Shown here: piece by piece, positions 17,806-62,446 of the stretch
How positions within the stretch are numbered: position 1 is the first letter of the stretch
Layout of the letters: each line of letters starts with the position of its first letter
Virus record (IMG/VR): IMGVR_UViG_3300046616_000314
Span: 124,001-188,000 of that record
DNA length: 64,000 nucleotides
Reading direction: 5' to 3' (one strand)
Notes under the pieces: model-generated
What the model was told of the DNA's origin: nothing
The model's input: only the letters and a program-made list of their open reading frames with translations
Databases searched by the model: none
Program-made: the position numbers and the translations under genes

Positions 17806-17874
17806 TTAAAATTACCTAAAAATTTATAATCCCATATTGCCAAATTGGGACAACGGAAGTCAATAAATAAACGC

Positions 17875-19236
17875 ATGGCTATTCACACATTGGATCATTT
17901 TTATGATCGTCAGCAACTTCGTTTCCTAGAGCAAGTGGTTCGCGCCTTTTCGGGGTTCCAATATACCATTGGTAGCCGCAAGGGTATGCCTCCTGAACTG
18001 AAGATGGTCCCGGTCACGATGGCTAAGACAAGCAAGCTTGTCGCCAACATCATGCGCAACGGTTCTGAAAACAGCCTCAACTCCGCGCCTCAGATTACGG
18101 TCTGGCAGACAGGCTTGACGGGGCGTCGCGAAGACGTTCAGAACCCGGCTCACGTTGATGAGCTAAAAGTTATCGAGCGTGCGATTGATCCGCTCACGAA
18201 CAAATATACGGCTGAACGCGGGCGTAGTTATAGCGTCAAGCGTCTGATGCCCCGACCGTTCAACATGGAAATCCAAATCGACCTTTGGACATCCAACTAC
18301 GAACAAAAATACGAAATCATGGAACAAATTCTTCCGGTTATGTATCCTAACTTCTGGATTCAAAACAGCGACAATGCGTTGGATTGGACTGCCCTGACGG
18401 ATGCTCACCTAGAAGACATCACATGGACTTCTCGTTCTATTCCGGTCGGTACCGAGGAATTGGAAATCTCTACGATGAAGCTGCGTATTCCTATTTGGAT
18501 TTCGCCGCCAGCCATGGTCACGCAACAGCGTCTCATCGAACAAATCGTCACGAACATCAACGACGTTCCGTTCGATGAAAATACTATCGTGGATAAGGAC
18601 TACGCGAAAGGTAAGCGCATGTCGCAAGAGGTTGTTACTCCTGGCAACTTCAAAGTCTACATCGAAGGCAACATCGCTTCGCTAGTCGATGAGCGTGGCT
18701 CGAATGTCGATGCAGAGGGCAATCCCTACAAATGGTCTGAATTGCTTTGGGATTATGGAGCGTTGCGCCCGGCTGTCAGCCGTATGATTTTGAATCCCAA
18801 TGCGGCTGATTTGGAAGCGACATCGGGTATCGTTGGCACGCTGCAATACAGCCAAGACCCGAATGAATTATTTTTCCAAATTGATCCAGACACGATCCCG
18901 AGCAACACGTTTGCTCCGGTTGACGCCTTGATTGATCCTATGACAGCGTTCCCAAGCCAAAAACTTCCCCCGGTGGCTCAAGGTCAACGATATCTGATTA
19001 TCAGTGATGTTGGACCTTCGGTAGCGTGGGGAAATCTGAATGCCAGCGTAAATGATATTATTGAATTTTCGGGTACGGAATGGTTTGTATCGTTTGATGC
19101 TTCGCAATCGGACGCAACACAGTTACAGTTCGTATTGAATTTGAATTCTTCGAATCAACTCAAGTGGACTGGTATAGAATGGATTCTATCTATCGATGGT
19201 ATCTATAACCCTGGCTTCTGGCGTCTAAAACTCTGA
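17875..19236 (+). CDS. tail sheath stabilizer/tail completion protein, T4 gp15-like, with C-terminal extension
   Basis: HFYDRQQLRFL, MPRPF...DLWTSN.EQK..IMEQI...F; C-terminal GQRYLI...WG...NDIIEF module; AATAAATA upstream. Confidence 0.75.
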   Translation: MAIHTLDHFYDRQQLRFLEQVVRAFSGFQYTIGSRKGMPPELKMVPVTMAKTSKLVANIMRNGSENSLNSAPQITVWQTGLTGRREDVQNPAHVDELKVIERAIDPLTNKYTAERGRSYSVKRLMPRPFNMEIQIDLWTSNYEQKYEIMEQILPVMYPNFWIQNSDNALDWTALTDAHLEDITWTSRSIPVGTEELEISTMKLRIPIWISPPAMVTQQRLIEQIVTNINDVPFDENTIVDKDYAKGKRMSQEVVTPGNFKVYIEGNIASLVDERGSNVDAEGNPYKWSELLWDYGALRPAVSRMILNPNAADLEATSGIVGTLQYSQDPNELFFQIDPDTIPSNTFAPVDALIDPMTAFPSQKLPPVAQGQRYLIISDVGPSVAWGNLNASVNDIIEFSGTEWFVSFDASQSDATQLQFVLNLNSSNQLKWTGIEWILSIDGIYNPGFWRLKL

Positions 19237-19274: not shown

Positions 19275-19351
19275 GCGCTCTTAGCTTAGCGGTCGAAAGC
19301 CGGGTGCTCATAACACTCTGATCACTGGTTCGAATCCAGTAGGGCGCACCA
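19275..19351 (+). tRNA. tRNA with CAU anticodon (Ile2 or elongator Met)
   Basis: Full cloverleaf GCGCTCT...CT-CAT-AA...AGGGCGC-ACCA; G1-C72 paired, so not an initiator. Confidence 0.92.
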
Positions 19352-24697: not shown

Positions 24698-24774
24698 GCG
24701 CCCTTCGTCTAACTGGACTAGGACCCTCGACTTTCAATCGGGTAATGCGGATTCGAATTCCGTAGGGCGTACCA
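24698..24774 (+). tRNA. tRNA-Glu(UUC)
   Basis: Cloverleaf with CT-TTC-AA loop and CCA end. Confidence 0.92.
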
Positions 24775-24794
24775 ACCTTTATTAGGTACATGAT

Positions 24795-24869
24795 GCGGCT
24801 ATAGCTCAGAGGTAGAGCGTCTGCTTGCCATGCAGAAGGTCGTGGGTTCGATCCCCACTAGCCGCTCCA
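24795..24869 (+). tRNA. tRNA-Gly(GCC)
   Basis: Cloverleaf with TT-GCC-AT loop, U73, CCA. Confidence 0.95.
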
Positions 24870-24893
24870 TCACCCTAATAAATGTTCCTGTGT

Positions 24894-24968
24894 GGAGCAT
24901 TCGTCTATCGGTTAGGACGCCAGAATTTCACTCTGGAAAGAGGGGTTCGATTCCCCTATGCTCTTCCA
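24894..24968 (+). tRNA. tRNA-Glu(UUC), second divergent copy
   Basis: Cloverleaf with AT-TTC-AC loop and CCA end. Confidence 0.9.
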
Positions 24969-36121: not shown

Positions 36122-37474
36122 ATGATTCGACTGCACAATTCGTTGTCACGGAAGTTGGAAGACTTCAAGCCGATTGATTCTAATCGGGTGACGATGTACG
36201 TGTGTGGTGCGACCGTTTATGACACCCCTCACCTGGGTAACGCCCGTCCTGCTGTTGTGTTCGACGTGCTGTTCCGGCTGTTGCAACACGCCTATCCCTT
36301 GGTTGAGTATGCGCGAAACTTCACTGACGTTGATGACAAGATCATCGCCCGGTCGAACGAATCCGGCGAACCCATCAATGAACTGACTGAACGGGTCATC
36401 CGCGAGTATCACGCCAGCATGGATGCGCTGGGCGTGGCGCGACCGACTTATGAGCCGCGCGTGACGGGCAACATGGCTCCGATCAAGGGCATGATCTCTG
36501 AACTGATTATGTCGGGGCACGCCTATGTCTCTGAAGGTCATGCACTATTCGACGTGAAATCATTCCCGTTGCATGGATCATTGAGCGGACATCTTCAAGA
36601 AAACTTGGATGTTGGACACCGCGTGGCTGTTGCCGACTATAAGCGCGATCCGGCGGATTTCGTTTTGTGGAAGCCTGCCAAGGAAGGCGAGCCCGCTTGG
36701 GACTTCCCTTCGGTTAGTTCGGGTCGCCCTGGCTGGCACATTGAATGCTCCGCGATGATCAAAAATGTTTTCGCGGACAACACCATTGATATTCATGGCG
36801 GCGGCGCGGACCTTCGGTTCCCGCATCACGAATGCGAAATGTCACAGAGCCATGCGGCGAATGGTCATCATTTAGCTAACTACTGGCTGCACAATGCCAT
36901 GGTTACGCTTGGTGGAAGCAAGATGCAAAAGACGGGTAGTCATATGATTACTGTCGATCAAATTTTGCGAAACAATGATGGGGCTTCAGTTCGCTTTGCA
37001 TTGCTGTCAAGCCATTATCGGTCGCCTCTGGATTGGTCGCCAGAACTACTCGAAAACAGCCATGGGACGCTTGCTAAGTGGCATAAGCTACTTTCGGCGA
37101 GCGATGCTCCTGCGGAGGCTAACAACGTCTCTACGGCGATCCTGAAGCCTCTGTATACCGATCTGAACGTCCCTGGCGCGGTGGGTGCAATCCATAACGC
37201 GCTGGCGACTGTCACGGATACGGTTGCCGCCGGGGTTCGCTATGCTGCTTCGGTCATGGGCTTCGATCTCAGTCAGGAAGCCAACCTAGCGTTCTTGAAG
37301 GAACCGGAGTTGGAGCCGCAATTGGTTCTGGAAATCGAGCGTTTGCTAGGCGAACGGGCTGTTGCCAGACAAAATAAAAATTTTGCGGAATCGGATCGGG
37401 TTCGCGAACTGATCGCCAACATGGGGGTCGTTGTGGAAGACGGTCCCGAAGGCACGACGTGGAAAGTCAAATGA
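36122..37474 (+). CDS. cysS: cysteinyl-tRNA synthetase
   Basis: YVCG.TVYD..HLGNAR, NFTDVDDKII, DF.LWK, GRPGWHIECSAM, DIHGGG.DL.FPHHE, KMQKT (KMSKS variant), C-terminal anticodon-binding domain. Confidence 0.95.
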   Translation: MIRLHNSLSRKLEDFKPIDSNRVTMYVCGATVYDTPHLGNARPAVVFDVLFRLLQHAYPLVEYARNFTDVDDKIIARSNESGEPINELTERVIREYHASMDALGVARPTYEPRVTGNMAPIKGMISELIMSGHAYVSEGHALFDVKSFPLHGSLSGHLQENLDVGHRVAVADYKRDPADFVLWKPAKEGEPAWDFPSVSSGRPGWHIECSAMIKNVFADNTIDIHGGGADLRFPHHECEMSQSHAANGHHLANYWLHNAMVTLGGSKMQKTGSHMITVDQILRNNDGASVRFALLSSHYRSPLDWSPELLENSHGTLAKWHKLLSASDAPAEANNVSTAILKPLYTDLNVPGAVGAIHNALATVTDTVAAGVRYAASVMGFDLSQEANLAFLKEPELEPQLVLEIERLLGERAVARQNKNFAESDRVRELIANMGVVVEDGPEGTTWKVK

Positions 37475-41111: not shown

Positions 41112-42299
41112 ATGGCTGATTTTTCCGTTGAAGTGGTGCGGATCGCTGCACCCGTTACCGATCACCCGAACGCTGACCGCCTGTCGCTGATTCAAATCGG
41201 CGGCTACCTCTGCATTTCCGCCAAGCTGGACGACGGCTCGCATCGCTACGAAGAAGGCGATCTGGTCGTCTACGTTCCCGAAGCGTCGGTGGTTCCTGAG
41301 TACATCCTGAAGCCGGGCTTCTGGGATGAAGCCAAGGGCAAGGGCATCCTGGCGGGGTCGAAGGGCGACCGCGTTAAGGCGAAGCGTCTGCGCGACATTT
41401 TCTCGCAAGGCATTCTGCTGGCTGTCGAATTCGACATGGGGGCTCCGACTGTTGGCGACGATGGTTCGCTTGATCTGACTCCGCACTTCTACATCACCAA
41501 CGAAGCTGGTGAGCGACTGAAGGTGGAAGCCGGTGATAACGTCGCCGAATTCCTGGGCATCACCAAGTACGAGCCGCCGGTTCCGGCGTGCCTCGCGGGT
41601 GAAGTCTGCAACATCTTCGGCAAGACCGCCAAGTATGATTTCGAAAGCATTCAACGGGTCACTGACCTGTTCGAAATCGGCGAAGATGTCATCGCCACCG
41701 AAAAGATTCACGGCACGAACAGCCAGATCGGCTACGTTCCGGGTCTGAACCATGAAGAACTGTTCTTCGACGGCAACCTGTACATCGGTTCGAAGGGTCT
41801 TTCGGCTCAAGGTCTGGTGATGAAGAACAACGAAAAGAACAAGACGAATACCTACGTCCTGGCTCTGACGAACCTTCTGGATCAAGGCTTCGGCGACAAG
41901 ATCAAGGTGATTTCGGATCGTTTCGACGGCGCCGTTGTTCGCGTCTTCAGCGAAATCTACGGCAAGGGCATTCAAGACCTGTCGTACGGTACGGACAAGC
42001 CGACCATCGCGGCGTTCGACATTCAAATCAACGGCGAATACGTCGCCTACGATCTGATGGTTGAACTGGCGACGGAACTGGGCATCGCCGTGGTTCCGAC
42101 GCTGTACGAAGGTCCCTACGACCTTGAAGCTCTGATCGTCCATCGGGACGGCATTGACACGATTTCGCAAACCAACGTGCGCGAAGGCATCGTGATCAAG
42201 GCGCGGAACGGCGGTCGTCACGTCCACCACGGTCGTAAGATCGGTAAGTGGGTGAGCCCGGCGTATCTGGAACGCAAGAACGCCACCGAACACAACTAA
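41112..42299 (+). CDS. ATP-dependent RNA ligase, DRB0094/Rnl2-like
   Basis: N-terminal HPNADRLS domain; motif I TEKIHGTN, SEIYG.GIQ, FDI, REGIVIK. Confidence 0.9.
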   Translation: MADFSVEVVRIAAPVTDHPNADRLSLIQIGGYLCISAKLDDGSHRYEEGDLVVYVPEASVVPEYILKPGFWDEAKGKGILAGSKGDRVKAKRLRDIFSQGILLAVEFDMGAPTVGDDGSLDLTPHFYITNEAGERLKVEAGDNVAEFLGITKYEPPVPACLAGEVCNIFGKTAKYDFESIQRVTDLFEIGEDVIATEKIHGTNSQIGYVPGLNHEELFFDGNLYIGSKGLSAQGLVMKNNEKNKTNTYVLALTNLLDQGFGDKIKVISDRFDGAVVRVFSEIYGKGIQDLSYGTDKPTIAAFDIQINGEYVAYDLMVELATELGIAVVPTLYEGPYDLEALIVHRDGIDTISQTNVREGIVIKARNGGRHVHHGRKIGKWVSPAYLERKNATEHN

Positions 42300-44997: not shown

Positions 44998-45432
44998 ATG
45001 AGTTGGGATGCCAGATGGCTCTCACAAGCGGAACACTCTGCAAGTTGGAGCAAAGATCGAAGCCGACACGTCGGCGCGGTCATCGTGAGAGGCGATATTG
45101 ATATTTCGAAAGGCTGGAATGGTTTTCCACGCAAGATTAACGACGAAGTTGACGAAAGACACGAACGTCCGCTGAAATATCTTTGGACGGAACACGCCGA
45201 AAGAAACGCAATCTATAACGCTGCAAAGCATGGTTTCGCGACTGACGGTTGTAGAATTTATCAGACTTTATATCCCTGCGCACATTGCGCCCGAGCCATT
45301 ATTCAATCGGGCATAATCGAAGTCATCACAACCGAACCGGATTGGAATGACCCGACCTATGCCGAAGAATTTAAAGTAACTAAACAGATGCTCGCGGAAG
45401 CATCAGTAAGTGTAAGGTTTTTAGATTTATGA
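44998..45432 (+). CDS. dCMP deaminase
   Basis: SKD...VGAVIV, G.NG.P, HAERNAI, PCAHC zinc motifs. Confidence 0.9.
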   Translation: MSWDARWLSQAEHSASWSKDRSRHVGAVIVRGDIDISKGWNGFPRKINDEVDERHERPLKYLWTEHAERNAIYNAAKHGFATDGCRIYQTLYPCAHCARAIIQSGIIEVITTEPDWNDPTYAEEFKVTKQMLAEASVSVRFLDL

Positions 45433-47507
45433 GCAAGCTTTTCGTTGAAAAAGTAATGTTGAACCTTCTCACCACTTGGAGAGAAACGTTCTACTACGAA
45501 AATCTGGTGCGTCGGGCTATGCACCACGGCGCGGGTCTCTTTGACCTGGGTGGTGTGTCATCGGATTGGCGTGAATTCCTGACCAACAAGCGCAACGCTC
45601 ACGTCGCGATCTTGGAAGCGCGAGGCGATAGCCGCGCGTCGAGCTACGACTATCTGGTTCCGATCACTGAATACCTCGACAAGTCGGACATGCAAACCGT
45701 GTACGACATGATCACGGGTAGCAAGCCGGAACTGAAGGAAGACTTCGTTCTGGACGCCAATATTGAACTGTTGGGCGGTCTGCTTGAACTGACTCCGATG
45801 GAACGTCTGGTTCTGCAAATGTCGGCGGAAATGCAGGAATTGGAATATCCAATGTCCGATATGTTCCAACGTCTGAATCACGATGACAAGATGCTGGACC
45901 CGGCTCTTGCCTATTCGGTCCTCTTTGGTAAGGCGGAATCGGAATTCAAGAACATCAGCAAGAGCTTCCTGCTGAACAGCGGCATTCTTCAGACGAACAT
46001 CGACTACAAGTATCTTCATCAAATCAATGAAGAACTGGTAGATTCGTTCACGGATAAGAAACTGACTCTGGATACTCTGGACGCAGTTTTGTTCCCGAGC
46101 GACATGAGCGCGAATCTGGACCTGACTTGCTACTCGCACCTGTCCAAGGAAATCGAGCGCACCGAACGTGTCATCCAAGTTTCGTTGGACGAAAAGAAAA
46201 TCGGTACCAATGTCATGTTCTGGGGTATCCCCGGTACTGGCAAGACCCAACTGGCTCTGACCCTGGCGAAGACCCACGGCTGGGACTTGAAGGTCATCGG
46301 TGACATTTCGAAGAATGATGCGACCGAAAAGAGCCGTGCGCAACGCATCGCTAGCTTGAAGATCGCGATGAAGCTGTATGCGGGCAAACCCAATACGGTT
46401 CTGTTGTTCGATGAAATGGAAGACCTGTTCAAGCACGACACGAACGCCGTGTTCTCGAAAGCCTTCATCAACCGCATCGTGGAATCCACTCCGGTTCCGA
46501 TCATCTGGACGACCAACGATCTGATCTCGCTGGGTAGCGCGGTGCTTCGCCGTATGACCTACAACATCGCGTTTGAAATCCCCACGCTTTCGGCTCGCCG
46601 CAAGATTTGGGAAAAGCATAGCGCGGACTACAAGGTTGATATCGACGCCGATACGATTTCGTCTCTGGCGACGAACTACAACATCGTTCCGGCTCTGATC
46701 GAAAACGCGGTCAAAATTTCTTCGTCGGCTGGTCTGGCTCACGCCGAATTGCCTGATATCGTCACGTCGCTGGATCGACTGATGAATTATGGTGAGAAGC
46801 GTAAGTTCCATATCACCACTAAGAAAGACACTCCGTATAGCCCGAAATGGGCTAACACTGATCTCGATTTGGACGATCTGACTTCACGTCTGACCAAAGC
46901 CAAACCGAATTTCAGCCTGTGTCTCTATGGTGCGCCCGGTACGGGTAAGAGCGAATATGGTCGTTATCTGACGGATAAGATCGGTAAGCCGCTGCTGTAC
47001 AAGCGTGCCTCTGATCTGATCAGCATGTGGGTTGGTGAAACTGAGAAGAACATCGCGCGTTGTTTCGAGGAAGCCAAAGAAGAACAAATGGTTCTGCTGA
47101 TTGACGAAGGTGATACTTTCCTGCGCTCTCGCGAAAACGCGAAAAATAGCTGGGAAGTCACTCAAGTCAATGAAATGCTGTCGCAAATGGAATCCCATTC
47201 GCAACCGTTCATTCTGACCACGAACTTGATGAAGGAACTGGACCCGGCGGCTATGCGTCGCTTCACCTTCAAGATGAAGTTCAACTTCCTGCGTTCTGAC
47301 CAAGCTGTCGAACTGTTCCAAGCGTATTTCGGAGTGGAAGCCCCCAAGGCAATCCTCACGAATGAAATCTTGGCTCCGGGTGACTTCGCCAACATCAAGC
47401 GTAAGACGGATATCCTGGGCATCACCGATGCCGAAGAAATCTACAAGATGATTCTTGAAGAATGCGCTCTGAAGCCGGATTCCCCGCCGCGCAAGCTGGG
47501 CTTCTAA
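45429..47507 (+). CDS. AAA+ ATPase with two ATPase domains
   Basis: GIPGTGKT/LLFDEME and GAPGTGKS/LLIDEGD; LDPAAMRRF; C-terminal LGF. Confidence 0.9.
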   Translation: MSKLFVEKVMLNLLTTWRETFYYENLVRRAMHHGAGLFDLGGVSSDWREFLTNKRNAHVAILEARGDSRASSYDYLVPITEYLDKSDMQTVYDMITGSKPELKEDFVLDANIELLGGLLELTPMERLVLQMSAEMQELEYPMSDMFQRLNHDDKMLDPALAYSVLFGKAESEFKNISKSFLLNSGILQTNIDYKYLHQINEELVDSFTDKKLTLDTLDAVLFPSDMSANLDLTCYSHLSKEIERTERVIQVSLDEKKIGTNVMFWGIPGTGKTQLALTLAKTHGWDLKVIGDISKNDATEKSRAQRIASLKIAMKLYAGKPNTVLLFDEMEDLFKHDTNAVFSKAFINRIVESTPVPIIWTTNDLISLGSAVLRRMTYNIAFEIPTLSARRKIWEKHSADYKVDIDADTISSLATNYNIVPALIENAVKISSSAGLAHAELPDIVTSLDRLMNYGEKRKFHITTKKDTPYSPKWANTDLDLDDLTSRLTKAKPNFSLCLYGAPGTGKSEYGRYLTDKIGKPLLYKRASDLISMWVGETEKNIARCFEEAKEEQMVLLIDEGDTFLRSRENAKNSWEVTQVNEMLSQMESHSQPFILTTNLMKELDPAAMRRFTFKMKFNFLRSDQAVELFQAYFGVEAPKAILTNEILAPGDFANIKRKTDILGITDAEEIYKMILEECALKPDSPPRKLGF

Positions 47508-62281: not shown

Positions 62282-62314
62282 TTGTTGGGATCAATCAAAA
62301 AATAAAAAGAGCGT

Positions 62315-62389
62315 TGGCGGCGATCAGAGGACTCGAACTTCTATACACCCTTTGCGAGGGCACCCGTATCCAATTCCGGGCAGATCGCC
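62315..62389 (-). tRNA. atypical tRNA-Cys(GCA)-like gene
   Basis: GGCGATC/GATCGCC acceptor stem, TTCGAGT T-loop, TC-GCA-AA loop, encoded CCA; G73, C33 and a T-stem mismatch are non-canonical. Confidence 0.6.
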
Positions 62390-62446
62390 ATGTCAAACGC
62401 TGACCATTACTATATAGGGAATCATCAAAGCCCCGTCAAGGCTTGA

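What the first reader, a model, noticed from the sequence alone, without database searches (positions are those of the whole stretch)
62315..62389. Non-canonical tRNA-Cys-like gene in a phage with its own CysRS: possible private synthetase/tRNA pair
Seen: perfect 7-bp acceptor stem, encoded CCA, its own TTGACG promoter and flanking precursor pairing (AGCGTT/AACGCT). However, it has G73, C33, an irregular D-arm/anticodon-arm junction and an A-C mismatch in the T stem. Known: U73 and GCA are the main CysRS identity elements and U33 is near-universal. The phage CysRS (36122) has KMQKT in place of KMSKS. Inference: an orthogonal or nuclease-resistant pair, a tRNA donating Cys outside translation, a decoy, or a decaying pseudogene.
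Basis: partly seen in the sequence, partly recalled or inferred. Interest (0 to 1): 0.6.

Follow-up and report, generated by a model that had tools for sequence, protein, structure and literature searches.

The report
Purine-73 cysteine tRNA in a megaphage
A 561-kb phage that carries its own cysteinyl-tRNA synthetase also carries a cysteine-anticodon tRNA whose main synthetase recognition base (U73) is replaced by a purine; related huge phages keep the same altered tRNA, so it may be a tRNA only the phage enzyme can charge, but that is not shown.

Summary
ARAGORN calls a 75-nt tRNA-Cys(GCA) at 62315-62389 (minus strand). It has a perfect 7-bp acceptor stem, encoded CCA, G73, C33, no nucleotide 26 (or a 4-bp anticodon stem), a 3-nt variable loop and an A·C mismatch in the T stem. 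Rfam scores it 27.3 bits, just under the threshold of 29.

It is not an isolated oddity. The window lies in a 561-kb IMG/VR phage. Homologous tRNA(GCA) genes with a purine at 73 occur in four other CysRS-encoding huge phages and on one 372-kb metagenome contig. Four of these five also have C33 and all five have G38. Across these six genes, 18 of 21 stem pairs show compensatory changes.

Each near-complete phage genome that has an intact purine-73 gene also has a U73 tRNA-Cys. Here that is an 86-nt long-variable-arm gene 16 kb away, outside the window.

C33 is the less strange feature. The C33/G38 loop occurs in U73 tRNA-Cys of bacteria, and it is apparently the only tRNA-Cys of one Myroides strain.

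The phage CysRS keeps its catalytic, zinc-binding and anticodon-binding residues. KMQKT is specific to this genome and does not track purine-73.

A private pair defined by the discriminator base is plausible but unproven. There are no RNA or charging data.

The parts
62315..62389 (-). tRNA-Cys(GCA)-like gene, 75 nt. It has G73 (62318), C33 (62356), anticodon 62355-62353, encoded CCA (62317-62315) and a T-stem A·C mismatch (62339/62329).
   Evidence: ARAGORN. Rfam tRNA 27.3 bits. Homologues with compensatory changes.
62411..62439 (-). Sigma-70-like promoter motif: TTGACG, 17 nt, TATATA. The -10 element ends about 21 nt upstream of the tRNA 5' end.
   Evidence: Sequence. One match in the window against 0.03 expected. 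Not listed by the stricter scan. Function not shown.
62396..62401 (-). 5' leader segment AGCGTT, complementary to the 3' trailer.
   Evidence: Sequence. Paired in the minimum-free-energy fold of the precursor.
62310..62315 (-). 3' segment AACGCT (it starts at A76), pairing with the leader.
62297..62308 (-). T-rich run (TTTTTATTTTTT) directly after the trailer pairing. Possible transcription stop.
   Evidence: Sequence. Not called by the terminator scan.
36122..37474 (+). Phage cysteinyl-tRNA synthetase, 450 aa, full length with anticodon-binding domain. HLGN at residues 37-40, KMQKT at 267-271.
   Evidence: Pfam PF01406 358 bits plus PF23493. 367 bits to E. coli CysRS 1LI5/1U0B, with Cys28, Cys209, His234, Glu238, Trp205 and the anticodon-contact residues R427, W432 (F here), D436 and R439 aligned (residue roles from PMC13449415).

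Best explanation
The gene is one member of a small, conserved class of second tRNA-Cys genes in huge phages that encode their own CysRS. In this class the anticodon stays GCA, but the discriminator U73 is replaced by a purine (G or A). U73 is the strongest recognition element for every studied CysRS. The anticodon loop usually carries C33 and G38.

**Most likely mechanism (inferred, not shown)**
- The RNA is transcribed from its own promoter-like site.
- It is trimmed out of a precursor whose leader and trailer pair.
- It decodes UGU/UGC as cysteine.
- Lacking U73, it should be a poor substrate for the host CysRS. It would then depend on the phage CysRS, which keeps all catalytic, zinc/cysteine-binding and GCA-binding residues.
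- The phage would thus hold one conventional route to Cys-tRNA (its U73 long-arm tRNA, usable by either enzyme) and one phage-only route. The altered anticodon loop of the phage-only tRNA might also escape loop-targeting host nucleases.

**Shown:** the gene's anatomy, its conservation and covariation, its co-occurrence with a U73 copy, and an intact CysRS.
**Inferred:** expression, charging, and which enzyme charges it.
For: 1. **Homologues keep a purine at 73.** They were found with a covariance model of this gene.
   - G001: G73, C33.
   - G012: G73, C33.
   - G002: A73, C33.
   - G017: A73, U33, G38.
   - Contig L236: G73, C33.
   - Sources.
2. **Covariation.** On these six genes, 96.8% of stem cells are paired and 18 of 21 pairs change on both sides. 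None of 500 shuffles reached this, and slid controls gave 37-51%.
3. **Orthology.** G000 and G001 share flanking ORFs around the gene. Their terminases are 65% identical.
4. **A second strain.** A ~98% identical strain in a second metagenome keeps G73 and C33. Its one change in the tRNA turns U6-A67 into U6·G67, which stays paired.
5. **Association with CysRS.** All four near-complete phage genomes with an intact purine-73 gene carry one CysRS, as does G001. Five CysRS-less huge phages had six tRNA-Cys genes, all with U73.
6. **No U73 among viral C33/G38 hits.** A scan of IMG/VR for the C33/G38 loop that did not use CysRS returned only purine-73 tRNA(GCA) genes. The same scan of bacterial and metagenome contigs gave 10 U73 and 1 G73.
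7. **The phage CysRS looks active and reads GCA**.
8. **UGY is still cysteine.** The phage's own conserved zinc-ligand cysteines are encoded by UGY. A translating GCA tRNA must therefore carry Cys.
9. **Precedents.** Non-U73 tRNA-Cys with co-varying CysRS in methanogens (PMC8762117). A dedicated CysRS*/selC* tRNA-Cys pair (PMC5389517). A discriminator base that sets the orthogonality of two PylRS pairs (PMC9071458).
Against: - No CysRS residue or motif tracks the presence of purine-73 tRNAs. KMQKT is unique to G000, and HxGN is found in all the phage enzymes.
- Several CysRS-encoding huge phages have only U73 tRNA-Cys: G003, G004, G005, G010 and G013.
- G005 sits inside the CysRS clade of G000/G001/G002.
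- Every such phage also has a U73 tRNA-Cys, which alone could explain why it keeps a CysRS.
- A complete 85.6-kb phage without CysRS (G051) has an A73/C33 tRNA(GCA)-like gene, though its acceptor stem is broken at pairs 1-3.
- This copy is the most aberrant of its class. It is 3 nt shorter between the D and T stems and has a T-stem mismatch.
- Its Rfam score is sub-threshold, as is that of G002 (26.2); G001 just passes at 29.9.
- Only DNA runs hold the locus, so there is no evidence of expression.
- The set of phages searched was mostly chosen through CysRS, which biases the association.
Confidence: 0.4

Rival explanations
1. This copy is a degenerating or already inactive member of the purine-73 class. 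The U73 long-arm tRNA-Cys does the work, and this gene persists by drift.
For: - It lacks nucleotide 26, or has a 4-bp anticodon stem.
- It has a 3-nt variable loop and an A·C mismatch in the T stem. Its relatives have standard spacing.
- Rfam scores it 27.3 bits, below threshold.
- The thermodynamic fold is not better than shuffles (z = -1.3).
- There are no RNA data.
Against: - The 7-bp acceptor stem is perfect. CCA, the T loop and G18G19 are intact.
- Its closest relatives score just as low: G001 29.9 and G002 26.2. A low generic score is therefore a trait of the class.
- The only substitution seen in a second strain preserves a base pair.
- The gene keeps a promoter-like site and a T-run in a 165-nt intergenic gap.
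Confidence: 0.2
2. It is a spare tRNA-Cys that resists nucleases or toxins and is still charged by the host enzyme or by both enzymes. The C33/G38 loop and the changed acceptor end let it survive host tRNA-targeting defences. Privacy towards the phage CysRS is not the point.
For: - Phage tRNAs often differ from host tRNAs in the anticodon loop at nuclease sites (PMC10264068).
- The C33/G38 loop is compatible with normal decoding. It is apparently the only tRNA-Cys type in Myroides sp. NP-2.
- The window also encodes an RNA ligase of the tRNA-repair kind at 41112-42299.
- Purine-73/C33 genes also occur on phage records where no CysRS was found (G050, G051, G052).
Against: - From established CysRS enzymology, replacing U73 lowers charging by orders of magnitude (reviewed in PMC9976931). 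A host enzyme is therefore unlikely to use a purine-73 tRNA.
- The host and its nucleases are unknown.
- G050 and G052 are fragments, and the G051 gene has a broken acceptor stem.
Confidence: 0.15
3. It is not a translation adaptor. It is a tRNA-shaped decoy, regulator or non-ribosomal Cys donor. It could titrate a host factor that binds tRNA-Cys, or it could be charged with another amino acid.
For: - Its two hallmark features for use by CysRS and the ribosome (U73 and U33) are both changed.
- The 32-38 positions can pair in all class members: U-A, C-G or U·G. That would close the loop to 5 nt.
Against: - The same loop serves as ordinary tRNA-Cys in bacteria.
- The anticodon GCA and A37 are invariant across the class. 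That fits decoding.
- Mischarging would poison the phage's own zinc-ligand cysteines.
- No partner gene is conserved next to it.
Confidence: 0.15

Closest known systems
Non-U73 tRNA-Cys of some methanogens (G73, A73 or C73) with co-varying CysRS (Perona et al. 2018, as summarised in PMC8762117)
   Same: A GCA-anticodon tRNA whose discriminator is not U, in a genome that has a CysRS. The idea that the change makes two cysteine-charging routes orthogonal.
   Different: - There it is the organism's own tRNA-Cys, and the second route is SepRS/SepCysS.
- Here it is an extra copy beside a U73 tRNA-Cys, in a phage.
- No CysRS change could be tied to it here.
selC* tRNA-Cys with dedicated CysRS* in Desulfobacterales (PMC5389517)
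   Same: A second tRNA-Cys species in one genome, served by an extra CysRS copy: a private cysteine pair.
   Different: - selC* tRNAs keep U73, have an 8/4 Sec-like shape with a long variable arm, and often have a UCA anticodon.
- CysRS* lacks the anticodon-binding domain.
- Here the tRNA is 7/5 with a short variable loop, GCA and G73, and the CysRS is full length.
Huge-phage translation genes (Al-Shayeb et al. 2020, PMC7162821)
   Same: A phage over 500 kb with dozens of tRNAs and its own synthetases. That paper proposes that phage synthetases charge the phage's own tRNA variants.
   Different: That paper gives no case in which a major identity element is switched. This locus would be a concrete, testable example.
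Phage tRNAs with anticodon-loop changes that evade host anticodon nucleases (PMC10264068)
   Same: A phage tRNA with a non-consensus anticodon loop (C33, and G38 in relatives).
   Different: The host and its nuclease are unknown. The same loop exists in cellular tRNA-Cys. The discriminator change is not explained by loop-nuclease evasion.
Two PylRS/tRNA-Pyl pairs kept apart by the discriminator base (PMC9071458)
   Same: A single base at position 73 can make two synthetase/tRNA pairs of the same amino acid mutually orthogonal in one cell.
   Different: A different synthetase class and amino acid. Both enzymes there belong to one organism, not to a host and a virus.

Membership tests
tRNA (Rfam RF00005) | Cloverleaf with a 7-bp acceptor stem, D, anticodon and T arms, and the T-loop consensus | tested here: met
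   ARAGORN cloverleaf. T loop TTCGAGT, and G18G19 present.
tRNA (Rfam RF00005) | Score at or above the curated gathering threshold (29 bits) | tested here: not met
   27.3 bits. Class relatives score 26.2-53.9 bits.
tRNA (Rfam RF00005) | Stems supported by compensatory changes in homologues | tested here: met
   18 of 21 pairs change on both sides and 96.8% of cells are paired; 0 of 500 shuffles reached this. The alignment was fitted to the model, which favours the structure.
tRNA (Rfam RF00005) | U33 preceding the anticodon | tested here: not met
   C33. C33 also occurs in cellular U73 tRNA-Cys.
Canonical tRNA-Cys (CysRS substrate) | GCA anticodon | tested here: met
Canonical tRNA-Cys (CysRS substrate) | U73 discriminator | tested here: not met
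   G73 at 62318. G or A in all class members.
Canonical tRNA-Cys (CysRS substrate) | Aminoacylation with cysteine | not testable with these tools
   No biochemical or RNA data. Only DNA runs hold the locus.
Non-U73 tRNA-Cys with co-evolved CysRS (methanogen type) | Changes in the acceptor-binding region of CysRS that accompany the discriminator change | tested here: inconclusive
   The alignment of 14 phage CysRS shows a few group-specific columns. They are confounded by phylogeny, and the residues that contact base 73 could not be looked up.
Non-U73 tRNA-Cys with co-evolved CysRS (methanogen type) | The non-U73 tRNA is the genome's tRNA-Cys | tested here: not met
   A U73/U33 tRNA-Cys is also encoded, at genome 202177-202262.
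selC* tRNA-Cys / CysRS* pair | 8/4 Sec-like cloverleaf with a long variable arm, and a CysRS lacking the anticodon-binding domain | tested here: not met
   7/5 cloverleaf with a 3-nt variable loop. The CysRS has the CysS_C domain.
Nuclease-evading phage tRNA | An anticodon-loop difference from the host tRNA at a nuclease site, and resistance to cleavage | not testable with these tools
   Host unknown. The loop differs from the consensus, but no host comparison or assay is possible.

The most novel reading that the evidence does not exclude
Huge phages carry a natural orthogonal cysteine pair. A purine-73 tRNA-Cys would be invisible to the host CysRS and charged only by the phage's own CysRS. 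This would give the phage a private supply of Cys-tRNA that survives host shut-off of, or attack on, the cellular tRNA-Cys/CysRS system. The C33/G38 loop would add resistance to loop-cutting nucleases.
Probability: 0.3. Interest if true: 0.75.

Novelty: new variant of a known kind. Interest (0 to 1): 0.6.

Why it matters
U73 is treated as a universal, dominant identity element for cysteine tRNA. A conserved viral tRNA(GCA) class that replaces it, in genomes that bring their own CysRS, would be a concrete case of a virus rewiring tRNA identity rather than merely supplementing codons.

It would make the long-standing proposal that huge-phage synthetases serve phage-specific tRNAs directly testable, using two RNAs and two enzymes. 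It could also supply a natural orthogonal CysRS/tRNA pair for genetic-code engineering.

Separately, the C33/G38 loop appears to work as the sole tRNA-Cys of a bacterium. That qualifies the textbook near-universality of U33.

Tried and rejected
- **Near and distant BLAST against GenBank phages.** No homologue of the locus or the tRNA.
- **Flanking ORFs as probes in IMG/VR.** No relatives. Pfam and PHROGs were blank for them.
- **A strict DNA pattern of this tRNA.** No hits.
- **A pattern with CGCAARGG.** It mostly hit GCAA tetraloops in the variable arms of Ser/Leu tRNAs.
- **The last viral scan, for U33/G38/R73.** It was swamped by tRNA-Ala(UGC) and gave nothing.
- **A shifted anticodon register** (CGC with U33, or a GNRA tetraloop closed by C33-G38). 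Rejected: the stems do not pair in that register, and it is not conserved (reading).
- **An 8-bp acceptor stem through a -1 base pairing with base 73.** The -1 base can pair in only 5 of 8 genes, which is not more than chance.
- **A second CysRS paralogue dedicated to the purine-73 tRNA.** Not found: there is one CysRS per genome.
- **KMQKT or HLGN as markers of a special enzyme.** Rejected.
- **Searching the 372-kb metagenome contig that holds L236 for CysRS.** The record is not held.
- **The paper describing the CysRS-tRNA structure.** Not held, so the residues that contact base 73 could not be mapped.
- **Evidence of expression.** No RNA run holds the locus.

Full report
**1. What is there**

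The window is bases 124001-188000 of a 561,116-bp IMG/VR virus record judged 97% complete. ARAGORN finds five tRNAs in the window. One is a 75-nt tRNA-Cys(GCA) on the minus strand at 62315-62389.

- a perfect 7-bp acceptor stem;
- G at the discriminator position, followed by encoded CCA;
- anticodon loop UCGCAAA, which gives C33;
- a D stem that abuts the anticodon stem with no nucleotide 26 (equivalently, a 4-bp anticodon stem);
- a 3-nt variable loop;
- an A·C mismatch in the T stem.

The T loop (TTCGAGT) and G18G19 are normal. The general Rfam tRNA model scores the gene at 27.3 bits, just below its threshold of 29.

Upstream lies TTGACG, 17 nt, TATATA. This occurs once in the window against 0.03 expected by chance. 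The stricter consensus scan does not list it. A 6-nt leader segment pairs with the trailer in the predicted precursor fold, and a T-run follows.

The CysRS at 36122-37474 is real and full length. It has KMQKT and HLGN motifs.

**2. It has relatives, and they keep the odd discriminator**

BLAST against GenBank phages and probes from the flanking ORFs found nothing. The phage CysRS did recover about twenty huge-phage records in IMG/VR.

I built a covariance model from this tRNA and searched it in those records. A broader second model followed. The hits were read with ARAGORN. The tRNA(GCA) genes of these phages fall into three kinds:
- **Ordinary short genes** with U33 and U73. This is the largest group.
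- **Long-variable-arm genes** with U33 and U73. These are in G000, G012, G022 and G026.
- **A class with a purine at 73**, listed below.

| Record | Position 73 | Anticodon loop |
|---|---|---|
| G000 (this gene) | G | UCGCAAA |
| G001 | G | CCGCAAG |
| G012 | G | CCGCAAG |
| G002 | A | CCGCAAG |
| G017 | A | UUGCAAG |
| L236 (372-kb metagenome contig) | G | CCGCAAG |

On these six genes, 96.8% of stem cells form pairs and 18 of 21 pairs show changes on both sides. None of 500 shuffles reaches these values, and structures slid by one to three columns give 37-51% pairing. The alignment was fitted to the model, which favours the structure, but the margin is large.

G000 and G001 share flanking ORFs around the gene, and their terminases are 65% identical. 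These two genes are therefore probably orthologues.

A watershed metagenome holds a ~98% identical strain. Its only change inside the tRNA converts U6-A67 to U6·G67, and G73 and C33 are retained.

The class is therefore a maintained, structured RNA and not a one-off decayed copy.

**3. What is specific to this copy**

The relatives have a nucleotide 26, a 5-bp anticodon stem and a 5-nt variable loop. This copy is 3 nt shorter between the D and T stems and has the T-stem mismatch.

Its low generic tRNA score is nevertheless shared by its nearest relatives.

| Record | Rfam tRNA score (bits) |
|---|---|
| G000 (this gene) | 27.3 |
| G001 | 29.9 |
| G002 | 26.2 |
| G012 | 35.0 |
| L236 | 50.3 |
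| G017 | 53.9 |

Whether the shortened arm still allows decoding cannot be judged from sequence. This keeps a "dying member of a live class" reading open.

**4. The genome has a conventional partner for CysRS too**

The whole genome has 36 tRNAs. One is a second tRNA-Cys(GCA) at genome 202177-202262, 16 kb beyond the window, inside a Ser/His tRNA cluster. It has U73, U33, an 86-nt length with a long variable arm, and an unusual G55.

In G002 and G012 the purine-73 gene lies 12-20 nt upstream of a U73 tRNA-Cys. G017 also has both kinds.

Every near-complete genome with an intact purine-73 gene therefore also has a U73 gene. For G001, which is 72% complete, none was found.

**5. C33 is not the strange part**

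I scanned for the loop CCGCAAG followed by a T arm and CCA, leaving position 73 free.
- **Metagenome and bacterial genome collections.** Both scans were cut at 120 rows. They gave eleven tRNA-Cys genes, ten with U73 and one with G73.
- **Myroides sp. NP-2.** It has three tandem tRNA-Cys genes, all with C33, G38 and U73. No other tRNA-Cys was among the model hits; the other hits were Gly, Trp and Asp. A C33/G38 loop can therefore serve as a cell's working tRNA-Cys.
- **IMG/VR.** Every tRNA(GCA) hit had a purine at 73: G001, G002, G012, plus three records, G050, G052 and G051.

In viruses this loop therefore goes with purine-73. In cells it goes with U73.

**6. Link to the phage CysRS: suggestive, not established**

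In favour:
- Each of G000, G001, G002, G012 and G017 has exactly one CysRS.
- Five huge phages without CysRS had six tRNA-Cys genes, all with U73.
- The phage enzyme aligns over its full length with E. coli CysRS. The zinc and cysteine ligands (C28, C209, H234, E238) and W205 are conserved. So are the anticodon contacts R427, W432 (F here), D436 and R439 (roles from PMC13449415). It should therefore be active and should read GCA.

Against:
- KMQKT is unique to G000, and the others have KMSKS or KMAKS. HxGN is common to all phage CysRS. No column cleanly tracks purine-73 beyond what phylogeny explains.
- Several CysRS-positive phages have only U73 genes. One of them, G005, nests with G000, G001 and G002 in the CysRS tree.
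- G051 is a complete 85.6-kb phage without CysRS. It has an A73/C33 tRNA(GCA)-like gene, although its first three acceptor pairs are broken.
- G050 and G052 are fragments, so the absence of CysRS there says little.
- Most records were reached through CysRS, so the association is biased.

**7. Other readings**

- The phage's own conserved cysteines are encoded by UGY. A GCA tRNA active in translation must therefore carry cysteine. This argues against mischarging.
- The invariant GCA and A37 across the class fit decoding.
- A nuclease-evasion role for the loop fits published proposals (PMC10264068). It also fits the RNA ligase gene in the window. It does not explain the discriminator change.
- From established enzymology, U73 together with GCA dominates CysRS recognition (PMC9976931). 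A host CysRS is therefore unlikely to use a purine-73 tRNA.
- Natural non-U73 tRNA-Cys with co-varying CysRS exist in methanogens (PMC8762117).
- A dedicated CysRS*/tRNA-Cys pair exists in Desulfobacterales (PMC5389517).
- A discriminator base alone separates two PylRS pairs (PMC9071458).
- Al-Shayeb et al. proposed that huge-phage synthetases charge phage tRNA variants (PMC7162821).
- I found no paper describing purine-73 tRNA-Cys in phages. The library searched is incomplete.

**8. Verdict**

The best explanation is a conserved, discriminator-switched second tRNA-Cys that probably depends on the phage CysRS (confidence 0.4).

| Rival explanation | Confidence |
|---|---|
| This copy is decaying | 0.2 |
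| A defence-evading spare tRNA charged by the host enzyme or by both | 0.15 |
| A non-translational tRNA mimic | 0.15 |

It is a new variant of known kinds: non-U73 tRNA-Cys, and phage synthetase/tRNA sets. A simple charging assay would decide it.

Noticed in passing
Outside the window: genome 202177-202262 (L159:1501-1586, minus strand): A second tRNA-Cys(GCA) with U73 and U33, a long variable arm (86 nt), a 6-bp anticodon stem, a 3-bp D stem and G55 in the T loop. It sits in a Ser/His tRNA cluster. Similar long-arm tRNA-Cys genes occur in G012, G022 and G026. Class-II-shaped tRNA-Cys is itself unusual.
   Followed up: partly
Outside the window: genome 195100-195175: ARAGORN calls a tRNA of undetermined identity with a 6-nt anticodon loop (anticodon given as 'ct').
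   Followed up: no
L413:1174-1573 (Myroides sp. NP-2, G027 contig 44): Three tandem tRNA-Cys genes, all with C32, C33 and G38 (loop CCGCAAG) and U73. They are apparently the only tRNA-Cys of this bacterium: a cellular exception to near-universal U33.
   Followed up: partly
window 41112-42299 (+): An RNA ligase (Pfam RNA_ligase plus the PHA02142 OB domain), of the kind phages use to repair cleaved tRNAs. This fits a conflict over tRNA integrity.
   Followed up: no
window 36122-37474 (+), and CysRS of 13 other huge phages: All huge-phage CysRS examined have HxGN in place of the HIGH motif. Only this genome has KMQKT in place of KMSKS.
   Followed up: yes
L142:1480-1600 (G002), L085:1480-1600 (G017), window 62296-62404: Several huge-phage tRNA genes have 6-10 nt of leader that is complementary to the trailer (for example GAGAGAT/ATCTCTC, and a 10-bp pair at the G017 U73 gene). 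This extends the acceptor helix in the precursor and may be a shared processing or termination signal.
   Followed up: partly
window 24698-24968 and 19275-19351 (+): Four further tRNA genes in the window, all with normal Rfam scores of 51-74 bits: Met(cat), Glu(ttc) twice, and Gly(gcc).
   Followed up: no
window 17845-19236 (+) and 45429-47507 (+): A T4 gp15-like tail sheath stabiliser and a double AAA ATPase, confirming a myovirus-type huge phage.
   Followed up: no
L445:1038-1111 (G051, complete 85.6-kb phage): A tRNA(GCA)-like gene with C33, G38 and A73 but mismatches at acceptor pairs 1-3, in a phage without CysRS. It is either a broken copy or a differently processed RNA.
   Followed up: partly
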